DNA of 64,000 bases, from assembly GCF_006345805.1 (NCBI RefSeq), contig NC_043024.1, positions 11,966,001-12,030,000 of the forward strand, read 5' to 3'. Below are positions 580 through 64,000 of this stretch, one piece after another (the first letter of the stretch is position 1; each line of letters opens with the position of its first letter). A program made the translations under genes and the position numbers. The stretch is from Octopus sinensis. Lineage: Eukaryota. Under the pieces are notes generated by a model. That model made no database searches, had not been told where the DNA came from, and worked only from the letters and a program-made list of their open reading frames with translations.

Positions 580-721
580 CACTTGTGTACGAGGTCGATG
601 GAAATGTACTCAAGACAAATGTGCGGGTACCTGCAGCATCTTGGGAAGGGCCCACTTCAGCACATTTGATGGAGAAATATTCAAATTCGAACCTACAGCT
701 TGTCAATACGATTTGGTCCAG
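580..721 (+). CDS. Exon 1 in window: end of E/VWC-like module and start of vWD (D2-like)
   Basis: ttttag|C...CAG|gtttgt; phase 2 to 0; (C)[47 protein letters not shown]. Reading frame not in ORF track. Confidence 0.92.

Positions 722-64000: not shown

What the first reader, a model, noticed from the sequence alone, without database searches (positions are those of the whole stretch)
580..64000. SCO-spondin/mucin hybrid architecture: D2-D'D3, LDLa x6, four discoidin-like modules, giant PTS
Seen: the exon chain goes from vWD-C8-TIL assemblies into six LDLa repeats, four discoidin-like modules separated by Thr/Pro linkers, then over 3,200 aa of PTS. No TSP1 (WxxWxxC) repeat was seen. Known: vertebrate SCO-spondin has vWD-C8-TIL, LDLa, one F5/8C and many TSP1 repeats but no large PTS; vertebrate gel-forming mucins have PTS but no LDLa. 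Inference: a cephalopod polymeric secretion protein with an SCO-spondin N-terminus and a lectin-decorated mucin body, possibly for skin or sucker mucus, egg jelly or an extracellular fibre.
Basis: partly seen in the sequence, partly recalled or inferred. Interest (0 to 1): 0.75.

Follow-up and report, generated by a model that had tools for sequence, protein, structure and literature searches.

The report
Octopus SCO-spondin gene with giant mucin domain
The window holds the middle of an octopus gene of the SCO-spondin family that carries four divergent discoidin-fold modules and a mucin-like exon of over 3,200 residues.

Summary
On the + strand, 31 exons with canonical AG/GT sites join into a stop-free 5,129-aa reading frame, once one missing base in exon 3 is allowed for.

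- **Domains:** Pfam confirms VWD-C8-TIL-TIL, VWD-C8-TIL and six LDLa repeats.
- **Modules:** the four 138-aa Cys-bracketed modules have no Pfam hit. An AlphaFold model (pLDDT 94) matches only discoidin/F5-8C domains in the PDB.
- **PTS exon:** 54397-64000 encodes 3,202 aa (54% S+T+P, no Cys or Trp) and runs off the window.

The orthologue in O. bimaculoides is already named SCO-spondin in RefSeq. In that locus the PTS reading frame runs straight into a TSP1 repeat, and a model with many TSP_1 domains follows.

So this is an octopod SCO-spondin-family gene that amplified its discoidin-like module and gained a giant mucin domain. The same order is conserved in O. vulgaris and Argonauta hians. 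Related architectures occur in an octopus paralogue and a nemertean.

Published work already noted SCO-spondin-like invertebrate mucins. No public model, and no paper in the searches made of the held library, gives the full architecture. No transcript data were examined. Interest is moderate.

The parts
580..721 (+). Exon 1 in the window: end of the preceding Cys-rich unit and start of the D2 VWD. The gene's 5' part (signal peptide, D1) lies upstream of the window.
   Evidence: AG/GT sites; tblastn to P0001 and P0045; Pfam VWD.
2696..3013 (+). Exon 2, D2 VWD.
4429..4589 (+). Exon 3, D2 VWD (GLCG motif). One base is missing between 4547 and 4548 relative to O. vulgaris, which shifts the frame as the sequence stands.
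6374..6605 (+). Exon 4, C8 of D2.
8283..8544 (+). Exon 5, TIL of D2.
9489..9684 (+). Exon 6, TIL of D'.
10566..10657 (+). Exon 7, Cys-rich E-like unit of D'.
12044..12093 (+). Exon 8, short linker before D3.
13462..13803 (+). Exon 9, D3 VWD, first part.
   Evidence: VWD 136.8 bits. Aligns best to D3 of MUC2 (205.9 bits).
14670..14878 (+). Exon 10, D3 VWD, second part.
16041..16174 (+). Exon 11, C8 of D3, first part.
16811..16920 (+). Exon 12, C8 of D3, second part.
18388..18537 (+). Exon 13, TIL of D3.
18921..19014 (+). Exon 14, E-like unit of D3.
21046..21203 (+). Exon 15, end of D3 and LDLa 1.
21723..21836 (+). Exon 16, LDLa 2.
22912..23034 (+). Exon 17, LDLa 3.
24193..24309 (+). Exon 18, LDLa 4.
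26037..26147 (+). Exon 19, LDLa 5.
27112..27228 (+). Exon 20, LDLa 6.
29846..29878 (+). Exon 21, 33-nt linker ([11 protein letters not shown]). It joins LDLa 6 to the modules in both P0002 and P0045.
31777..31845 (+). Conserved 69-nt phase 1-1 exon ([23 protein letters not shown]). It is included in the O. bimaculoides model and skipped in the O. vulgaris model, so it may be a cassette exon.
33559..33983 (+). Module 1 exon A: T/P linker plus the first 97 aa of the discoidin-fold module.
35053..35194 (+). Module 1 exon B: last part of the module, ending ...HGCFEPVF.
37614..38065 (+). Module 2 exon A.
39145..39286 (+). Module 2 exon B.
41708..42192 (+). Module 3 exon A.
43967..44108 (+). Module 3 exon B.
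47113..47633 (+). Module 4 exon A.
51594..51735 (+). Module 4 exon B (the most diverged copy, 76% to copy 1).
54397..64000 (+). Giant PTS (mucin-domain) exon. It has a phase-1 acceptor after a pyrimidine tract and gives 3,202 aa in the window. It continues past the window's end.

Best explanation
The window is an internal 63 kb of one large gene on the + strand. It is the octopod member of the SCO-spondin family that RefSeq names 'SCO-spondin' in O. bimaculoides.

The encoded protein starts upstream of the window with a signal peptide, an EGF-like Cys-rich piece and D1. It then runs through:
- D2-D'-D3;
- six LDLa repeats;
- short linkers;
- four tandem divergent discoidin-fold modules separated by Thr/Pro linkers;
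- a single-exon mucin domain of more than 3,200 residues.

By orthology it goes on, beyond the window, into thrombospondin type-1 repeats.

Inferred mechanism:
- The protein is secreted.
- The D assemblies make disulfide-linked multimers, as in VWF and the gel-forming mucins.
- The PTS domain is densely O-glycosylated into a stiff, hydrated bottle-brush.
- The LDLa, discoidin-like and TSP1 modules give it binding sites for ions, glycans, lipids or matrix.
- The product would therefore be a polymeric mucus or fibre glycoprotein.

The discoidin-like module was amplified by tandem duplication of 4-5 kb genomic units. The copies are kept alike within each species, either by concerted evolution or by separate recent amplification.

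What is shown: exon structure, domains, fold, conserved collinearity, the PTS-to-TSP1 reading frame in O. bimaculoides, and the family placement of D3.

What is inferred: that all of it is one transcript in this species, secretion, multimerisation, glycosylation, and the tissue of expression.
For: Gene structure:
- 31 AG/GT exons give one open frame of 5,129 aa.
- The junctions match independent models: 0 gaps over 1,002 aa to Argonauta P0044, and 93% to O. bimaculoides P0045.
- Pfam domains are confirmed.

Links across the disputed junctions:
- LDLa 6 -> linker -> module 1 is joined in both P0002 (O. vulgaris) and P0045 (O. bimaculoides).
- Module -> PTS is joined in the 4,781-aa Argonauta model. 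That model starts at module 5 and covers the PTS frame. The same link is inferred for the 4,082-aa O. vulgaris model, which starts at module 2 but whose remaining part was not read.
- PTS -> TSP1 lie in one contiguous open frame in O. bimaculoides (L003 85615-86475, TSP_1 30.7 bits). The 1,037-aa model there carries many TSP_1 hits.
- All exon B donors and the PTS acceptor are phase 1.

Family placement:
- The best outgroup hit is Branchiostoma SCO-spondin.
- The NJ tree of D3 gives 100% support for a clade with amphioxus SCO-spondin, separate from vertebrate MUC5 (100%) and from hemolectin-like sequences.

Module:
- AF2 pLDDT 94.4.
- The best Foldseek PDB matches (ranks 1-33) are discoidin/F5-8C domains.
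- The Argonauta copy gives F5_F8_type_C as its best, sub-threshold, Pfam hit (E 0.0027).

PTS: composition and tandem arrays.

Conservation: 4 modules here, at least 3 in O. vulgaris, 5 in Argonauta. Identity is 89-100% within a species and 67-69% between species.
Against: - No transcript data were examined.
- Every public annotation splits the locus into 3-4 models.
- The window as assembled has a 1-nt frameshift in exon 3.
- TSP1 repeats are not in the window. They are shown only for O. bimaculoides, whose assembly is full of N gaps in the PTS.
- The Argonauta 4,781-aa and O. vulgaris 4,082-aa PTS models have no Pfam hit on record, hence no TSP_1 within them. For these species the repeats would have to lie in further models that were not examined.
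- No EMI domain is detected by Pfam at the N-terminus of the orthologue.
- No vertebrate SCO-spondin sequence could be put in the tree.
- Octopus has at least two further SCO-spondin-like paralogues, so one-to-one orthology is not established.
- Peptides of this protein were not found in the held part of the octopus skin-mucus proteome tables.
Confidence: 0.72

Rival explanations
1. There are two or more separate genes. One would be a D1-D3/LDLa/discoidin-like gene that ends after one or more modules. The other would be an independent downstream PTS(+TSP1) gene, as the public annotations have it.
For: - O. vulgaris, Argonauta and O. bimaculoides annotations all break the locus.
- Every exon B donor reads TTTC|GTAAGTAA, so an unspliced transcript ends ...FRK-stop. 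That is exactly how P0045 and P0036 end.
- An in-frame ATG lies just upstream of the PTS acceptor.
Against: - The break points differ between species, and the models overlap so that each junction is bridged in at least one species.
- A PTS gene starting at that ATG would begin [12 protein letters not shown]..., which by eye has no hydrophobic signal-peptide stretch (no predictor was run). It could then not be secreted or O-glycosylated.
- Phases match at all junctions.
- Gene predictors commonly break at tandem repeats and giant low-complexity exons.
Confidence: 0.15
2. It is a gel-forming mucin of the MUC2/MUC5 or hemolectin kind that merely picked up LDLa repeats. It would have no special relation to SCO-spondin.
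For: - It has D1-D2-D'D3 plus a giant PTS.
- O. vulgaris fragments are auto-named 'mucin-2-like'.
- D3 aligns well to MUC2 D3.
- Lophotrochozoan mucin-like proteins typically carry F5_F8 domains (PMC4948705).
Against: - D3 groups with amphioxus SCO-spondin at 100% bootstrap. It does not group with vertebrate MUC5, nor with the Aplysia/copepod/mayfly group.
- There are six LDLa repeats directly after D3, as in SCO-spondin.
- There is no CysD; the PTS has no Cys or Trp.
- TSP1 repeats follow the PTS in O. bimaculoides.
Confidence: 0.08
3. This copy is a pseudogene or null allele, inactivated by the 1-nt deletion in exon 3.
For: The window reads GCTGACCCGC where O. vulgaris reads GCTGATCCCGC. The frame then runs into TAA at the exon's end.
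Against: - All other 30 exons, all 61 splice sites within the window and a 9.6-kb open frame are intact.
- That is not expected after any length of neutral decay.
- A single-base assembly error or a very recent allele is more likely.
Confidence: 0.05

Closest known systems
SCO-spondin (SSPO), the Reissner-fibre glycoprotein of chordates; RefSeq 'SCO-spondin' of Octopus bimaculoides XP_052833208.1
   Same: - Three N-terminal VWD-C8-TIL assemblies followed directly by a cluster of LDLa repeats.
- A discoidin-type module after the LDLa cluster.
- TSP1 repeats further on (seen in O. bimaculoides).
- D3 clusters with amphioxus SCO-spondin.
- 93% identical to the O. bimaculoides model over 1,278 aa.
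   Different: - A single-exon PTS domain of more than 3,200 aa lies between the discoidin-like modules and the TSP1 repeats. From my own knowledge, vertebrate SCO-spondin has no such domain.
- The discoidin-like module is multiplied (4-5 copies) and too diverged for Pfam F5_F8_type_C.
- No EMI domain is detected in the orthologue.
- The C-terminus was not seen.
Limpet pedal-mucus protein P-vulgata_3 (with P-vulgata_6), Kang et al. 2020, PMC7333891
   Same: It is a mollusc mucus protein with vWFD x3, C8, TIL and LDLa x5, homologous to the first third of SCO-spondin and expressed in the secretory sole. A second mucus protein has TSP1 x4 plus a cystine knot.
   Different: No discoidin-like modules or PTS domain were reported there. 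The sequences are incomplete transcripts. Orthology to the octopus gene was not tested.
Invertebrate 'SCO-spondin-like' gel-forming mucins of Lang et al. 2016 (PMC4948705)
   Same: These are VWD-C8-TIL proteins with PTS domains whose VWD regions are closest to vertebrate SCO-spondins. The F5_F8 domain is described as typical of lophotrochozoan mucin-like proteins.
   Different: That paper does not mention cephalopods, a six-LDLa cluster, or TSP1 repeats after the PTS. The lophotrochozoan proteins it describes carry CysD domains, which are absent here.
'mucin-2-like' of the nemertean Lineus longissimus (XP_064639835.1) and the octopus paralogue CAI9718652.1
   Same: Both have D1-D3 with the same CC..G..C/EGF-like N-terminal piece, LDLa repeats, and tandem Cys-bracketed 'C..(D/E)GM..IP' modules separated by Thr-rich linkers. 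The Lineus modules are the only non-cephalopod relatives of the octopus module among 1.84 billion representatives.
   Different: They have short Thr linkers instead of a giant PTS. In Lineus, LDLa repeats are interspersed with the modules. Module identity is only 20-31%.
Vertebrate gel-forming mucins (MUC2, MUC5AC/B) and VWF
   Same: They share the D1-D2-D'D3 multimerisation head, and D3 aligns to MUC2 D3 at 206 bits. They also share a central single-exon PTS domain made of tandem repeats.
   Different: They have no LDLa, discoidin or TSP1 domains. The octopus protein has no CysD. Its D3 lies in a separate clade.

Membership tests
SCO-spondin | Three N-terminal VWD-C8-TIL assemblies (D1, D2, D'D3) | tested here: met
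   Two are in the window. The third lies upstream, in orthologue P0045, which has VWD x3, C8 x3 and TIL x4.
SCO-spondin | Cluster of LDL-receptor class A repeats directly after D3 | tested here: met
   Six repeats, Ldl_recept_a 210 bits, with one exon per repeat.
SCO-spondin | F5/8 type C (discoidin) domain downstream of the LDLa cluster | tested here: inconclusive
   There is no Pfam hit for the window's modules, and 18.3 bits against a 28.2 cut-off for the Argonauta copy. The fold is clearly discoidin. Homology to the SCO-spondin F5/8C domain itself was not tested.
SCO-spondin | Many thrombospondin type-1 repeats | tested here: inconclusive
   None in any frame of the window. In the orthologous O. 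bimaculoides locus the PTS frame ends in a TSP_1 repeat, and a model with many TSP_1 hits follows.
SCO-spondin | N-terminal EMI domain | tested here: not met
   There is no EMI hit in the first 231 aa of orthologue P0045 even at E<=10, only weak EGF hits. A CCDGYEGDKC motif is visible by eye. The region is outside the window.
SCO-spondin | C-terminal cystine knot | not testable with these tools
   It lies beyond the window and beyond the fetched loci.
SCO-spondin | D domains cluster with SCO-spondins in a phylogeny | tested here: met
   An NJ tree of D3 gives 100% bootstrap with Branchiostoma SCO-spondin P0003 and P0007, apart from MUC5 and FCGBP/zonadhesin. No vertebrate SCO-spondin was available for the tree.
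Gel-forming mucins (MUC2/5/6/19 type) | D1-D2-D'D3 head plus large central PTS domain | tested here: met
Gel-forming mucins (MUC2/5/6/19 type) | CysD (Mucin2_WxxW) domains interrupting the PTS | tested here: not met
   The 3,202 aa of PTS contain no Cys and no Trp.
Gel-forming mucins (MUC2/5/6/19 type) | D domains cluster with vertebrate mucins | tested here: not met
   Vertebrate MUC5 sequences form their own 100% clade.
Gel-forming mucins (MUC2/5/6/19 type) | C-terminal D4-VWC-cystine knot | not testable with these tools
   It is outside the window. In O. bimaculoides, TSP1 repeats follow the PTS.
Hemolectin/hemocytin (3+2 VWD with F5/8C) | D domains cluster with hemolectin-type proteins, and two further VWD units follow the F5/8C domains | tested here: not met
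   The mayfly, copepod and Aplysia sequences form a separate group (84%). No VWD follows the modules in the window.
F5/8 type C (discoidin) domain, PF00754 | Sequence match above Pfam's gathering score | tested here: not met
F5/8 type C (discoidin) domain, PF00754 | Discoidin beta-sandwich fold bracketed by an N- and a C-terminal cysteine | tested here: met
   AF2 pLDDT 94.4, all-beta. Foldseek probability is 1.00 to neuropilin b1, FVIII/FV C domains, CASPR2 and DDR2. Cys sits at positions 1 and 138 of each module. The disulfide itself was not checked in the model.

The most novel reading that the evidence does not exclude
In octopods, a single SCO-spondin-family polypeptide combines four parts:
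- the VWD multimerisation head;
- the LDLa cluster;
- amplified discoidin-fold modules;
- a true giant mucin domain, followed by the TSP1 array.

It would thus be both a 'Reissner-substance' protein and a polymeric mucin. That would be molecular support for the idea, raised by Helm et al. 2017 (PMC5543218), that SCO-spondin secretion derives from an ancestral mucociliary or epidermal mucus secretion. It would also show that a mucin domain can be inserted into that scaffold within one lineage.
Probability: 0.5. Interest if true: 0.6.

Novelty: new variant of a known kind. Interest (0 to 1): 0.45.

Why it matters
- **Biology.** SCO-spondin is best known as the material of Reissner's fibre in the chordate nerve cord. 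Its role outside chordates is an open question. A cephalopod family member with a mucin domain of over 3,200 residues gives a concrete gene to test. One could ask whether protostome SCO-spondins are mucus or adhesive polymers, as suggested for limpets, or neural secretions.
- **Annotation.** The locus is broken into three or four unrelated-looking models ('mucin-2-like', 'SCO-spondin', 'hypothetical protein') in all three octopod annotations examined. The joined model explains these fragments.
- **Domain family.** The discoidin-fold module is a rare, lineage-restricted sequence family that Pfam does not cover.

Tried and rejected
- **Third protein search.** I queried with the O. bimaculoides TSP1 and following exon to fetch the downstream model and its O. 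vulgaris counterpart. No candidate shared enough words. The region 3' of the PTS could therefore not be walked in O. vulgaris or Argonauta.
- **Length of search hits.** The second search, across the module-4/PTS junction, returned only two short proteins. No hit was longer than 1,708 aa. Full-length SCO-spondins, VWF and the 4,082-aa and 4,781-aa PTS models never came back from that tool.
- **Spliced module rejected.** The identical-length O. vulgaris segment of P0002 was used instead.
- **Wrong first reading.** I first read '...[20 protein letters not shown]' as the C-terminal strand of the module. The homologue models show it is intron. The true end is exon B, '...ILLDIHGC'.
- **EMI domain.** It is not found by Pfam in the orthologue.
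- **Skin-mucus proteome** (PMC11431876). The 'SCO-spondin-like' protein there (A0A7E6F2Q3) has peptides that do not match this gene. Five tryptic peptides of this gene were absent from the held, partly truncated, tables.
- **tRNA-derived SINE heads.** None were found.
- **Multimerisation cysteines.** I did not map the VWF/MUC2 cysteines onto D3, because the printed alignments were cut.
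Full report
**What the sequence is.** The window is AT-rich animal DNA (GC 0.33-0.47) full of microsatellites and dispersed repeats. It is 86-97% identical (mostly 90-96%) at DNA level, introns included, to Octopus vulgaris chromosome OX597840.1 (locus L001). Its coding exons are 93% identical in protein to O. bimaculoides. It therefore comes from an Octopus species or haplotype close to, but not the same as, the O. vulgaris reference.

**Checking the observation.** A six-frame scan shows a 3,233-codon stop-free frame from 54300 to the window's end, and many short Cys-rich open segments upstream. 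A crude concatenation of those segments found two near-identical proteins:
- P0001, a MetaClust protein;
- P0002, 'mucin-2-like isoform X1' of O. vulgaris.

tblastn of these proteins gave an exon map. I fixed every boundary by eye on the flanking sequence and joined the exons. This gave 30, later 31, exons, all with AG acceptors and GT donors. The result is one frame of 5,129 residues with no stop.

The junctions are independently confirmed. The first 1,002 residues align to the Argonauta hians model P0044 without a single gap (86% identity). Residues 1-1278 align to the O. bimaculoides RefSeq protein P0045 at 93%.

The only gap against P0045 is a 26-residue insert. It led to a conserved 69-nt phase 1-1 exon in the window at 31777-31845, which the O. 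vulgaris model skips.

Pfam confirms the domains:
- VWD-C8-TIL-TIL (D2 and D');
- VWD-C8-TIL (D3);
- six LDLa repeats (210 bits), one per exon.

The third VWD assembly aligns best to D3 of MUC2 (206 bits, against 147-148 bits for D1 and D2). P0045 has a further VWD upstream. The labels D2-D'D3 are therefore right.

One defect stands out. Exon 3 lacks a base between 4547 and 4548: the window reads GCTGACCCGC where O. vulgaris reads GCTGATCCCGC. As assembled, the frame is broken there. Everything else is intact, so I take it as an assembly error or a recent allele, and I flag it.

**The 'discoidin-like' modules.** Each module is 138 aa, begins and ends with a cysteine, and is split over two exons:
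- exon A carries the Thr/Pro linker plus 97 aa of the module;
- exon B is 142 nt.

There are four copies. They sit in tandemly duplicated genomic units, 88-95% identical over their alignable parts, introns included.

By sequence they are not recognisable as discoidin domains. Pfam gives nothing at E<=1. The Argonauta copy gives F5_F8_type_C only as a sub-threshold best hit (18.3 bits against a cut-off of 28.2).

An exhaustive HMMER search of 1.84 billion representative proteins found only seven relatives:
- cephalopod proteins;
- two short fragments from marine plankton metagenomes;
- a 4,464-aa 'mucin-2-like' protein of the nemertean Lineus longissimus;
- one weak hit (24% identity, E 2e-6) to a 2,151-aa repeat protein that looks unrelated.

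An alignment of ten module sequences (A1) gave an AlphaFold model with mean pLDDT 94.4 and an all-beta architecture. In Foldseek against the PDB, ranks 1-33 are all discoidin/F5-8C domains: neuropilin b1, factor V and VIII C domains and CASPR2. These have probability 1.00, E about 1e-5 and TM 0.6-0.68; DDR2 follows at rank 49. The module is a highly diverged, lineage-restricted member of the discoidin fold.

**The PTS exon.** From the acceptor at 54397 the window encodes 3,202 residues: 23% Ser, 21% Thr, 10% Pro, 11% Gly, and no Cys or Trp. It is built from:
- an array of 21 copies of a 66-nt (22-aa) unit;
- several arrays of a 72-nt (24-aa) unit;
- a recurring 69-aa marker, '[17 protein letters not shown]...', that groups these into super-repeats.

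It is a textbook mucin domain. The long ORFs on the minus strand under it are by-products of the repeat composition.

I had no RNA data, but the evidence favours one gene.

- Two independent models (P0002 and the RefSeq model P0045) splice LDLa 6 to the 33-nt linker exon and on to module 1.
- The 4,781-aa Argonauta model starts at module 5 and covers a PTS frame of at least 2,280 codons.
- The 4,082-aa O. vulgaris model starts at module 2 and has no Pfam hit. Its remaining part, which was not read, is presumably PTS.
- All exon B donors and the PTS acceptor are phase 1, and the acceptor follows a good pyrimidine tract.
- A PTS gene starting at the only nearby ATG would, by eye, have no signal peptide.

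The annotations break because every exon B donor is TTTC|GTAAGTAA. Reading into the intron gives ...FRK-stop, which is exactly how P0045 and P0036 end.

**What lies beyond the window.** This is the point that changes the interpretation. In the O. bimaculoides locus (L003), the gene named SCO-spondin is followed by PTS fragments between assembly gaps. These carry the same 69-aa marker at about 80-84% identity.

The last contiguous piece of that PTS frame ends '...TTAPTSDFWSLWTSWSDCSVKCGEGVQRRNRYS'. Pfam scores that uninterrupted frame as TSP_1 (30.7 bits, cut-off 21.6). With the next exon added, it covers the whole 49-position profile (41.1 bits). The gene model called there (1,037 aa, running off the locus) has many TSP_1 and TSP1_spondin hits.

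The window itself has no TSP1-like motif in any frame.

**Family placement.**
- The best hit outside cephalopods is Branchiostoma floridae SCO-spondin (41% identity, E 7e-193). It is ahead of an octopus paralogue and far ahead of vertebrate mucins.
- In a neighbour-joining tree of the D3 assembly (339 columns, 100 bootstraps), the window groups with O. bimaculoides SCO-spondin and Argonauta (100%).
- It then groups with the octopus paralogue (79%).
- All of these form a 100%-supported clade with amphioxus SCO-spondin and a TSP1+LDLa protein.
- Vertebrate MUC5, FCGBP/zonadhesin, and an Aplysia/copepod/mayfly group each form separate clades.

No vertebrate SCO-spondin could be retrieved, which limits the test. 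An EMI domain, typical of SCO-spondin, is not detected in the orthologue.

Octopus has at least two more SCO-spondin-like genes:
- The paralogue CAI9718652.1 has D1-D3, one LDLa and at least four other discoidin-like 'C..GM..IP' modules.
- The Lineus protein alternates such modules with LDLa repeats.

A head of SCO-spondin type followed by LDLa repeats and tandem discoidin-fold modules is thus a recurring lophotrochozoan design.

**Mechanism.** I commit to a secreted, disulfide-multimerised, heavily O-glycosylated polymer.
- The orthologue begins with a hydrophobic leader.
- The D1-D3 head is the multimerisation machine of VWF and the mucins (established knowledge; homology shown).
- The PTS domain is the substrate for dense O-glycosylation.
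- LDLa, discoidin-fold and TSP1 modules are binding modules.

None of these biochemical steps was tested here. Where the protein is made is unknown.

The literature gives a precedent: a SCO-spondin-like protein is made by the limpet pedal sole and found in adhesive mucus (PMC7333891). The SCO-spondin-like protein in octopus skin mucus is a different paralogue, and I found no peptide of this gene in the held tables.

**Evolution of the modules.** Copies are 89-96% identical within the window's species and 99-100% identical within Argonauta. Between the two they are only 67-69% identical. Copy number differs: 4 here, at least 3 in O. vulgaris, 5 in Argonauta. This indicates either concerted evolution or independent amplification in each lineage.

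**Novelty and verdict.** The gene is already in databases under automatic names, and its orthologue is called SCO-spondin. Two published ideas already cover much of the ground:
- some invertebrate mucins are SCO-spondin-like, and F5_F8 domains mark lophotrochozoan mucin-like proteins (PMC4948705);
- a SCO-spondin-like mollusc mucus protein has been described (PMC7333891).

What I did not find, in any public model or in the four full-text searches I ran of the held library, is the full architecture: head, six LDLa repeats, amplified discoidin-fold modules, a mucin domain of over 3,200 aa, and then TSP1 repeats.

I rate it a new variant of a known kind, of moderate interest. Its 'hybrid without TSP1' reading is only partly supported.

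Noticed in passing
window 4547-4548 (exon 3): There is a one-base deletion relative to O. vulgaris (GCTGATCCCGC becomes GCTGACCCGC). It shifts the frame of the D2 VWD exon and runs into TAA at the donor. It is the only defect in an otherwise intact 31-exon gene.
   Followed up: partly
window 35191-35202, 39283-39294, 44105-44116, 51732-51743; also L002 and L003: Every exon B ends TTTC|GTAAGTAA. An unspliced transcript would therefore end ...FRK-stop right after a module. The database models P0045 and P0036 end exactly so. This could be an annotation artefact or a real set of short isoforms.
   Followed up: partly
window 31777-31845: A conserved 69-nt phase 1-1 exon is present. It is included in the O. 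bimaculoides RefSeq model and skipped in the O. vulgaris model, so it may be a cassette exon.
   Followed up: yes
window about 1163-1378, 7045-7103, 10442-10516, 15003-15194, 19521-20297, 20411-20817, 21438-21603, 26434-26523, 35662-35895, 39757-39999, 42520-42725, 50132-50352, 52513-52555: A dispersed repeat of about 150-350 nt occurs at roughly 13-16 intronic sites in both orientations, partly as tandem copies. It translates as ...[30 protein letters not shown]. It is wrongly exonised in the protein model P0001 (residues 366-397). ARAGORN finds no tRNA-like head.
   Followed up: partly
window 54569-63541, minus strand: Nine ORFs of 158-342 aa lie antisense to the PTS exon, spaced about 830 nt apart. 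They look like by-products of the repeat's codon composition, not genes.
   Followed up: no
window 48000-50000; also 13790-14400 and 28700-29460: The last module unit's intron has an extremely AT-rich microsatellite block (GC 0.21). Two introns hold long (TC)n-like and (TG)n-like tracts, which create spurious ORFs of 200-390 codons in several frames.
   Followed up: no
P0047 (O. vulgaris CAI9718652.1) and P0040 (Lineus longissimus XP_064639835.1): An octopus paralogue and a nemertean protein share the SCO-spondin-type head, LDLa repeats and tandem Cys-bracketed 'C..GM..IP' modules that Pfam does not recognise. This appears to be an undescribed lophotrochozoan domain family of discoidin fold.
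   Followed up: partly
L004-L007 (Tara Oceans and other marine metagenome contigs): Exon-A-like module fragments (44-55% identical) occur on 0.8-1.2 kb contigs from marine plankton metagenomes. They presumably come from unidentified pelagic molluscs.
   Followed up: no
L003 80814-87595: The O. bimaculoides assembly is broken by N gaps throughout the PTS region and shows only one module. Its module count and PTS length are therefore unreliable.
   Followed up: no
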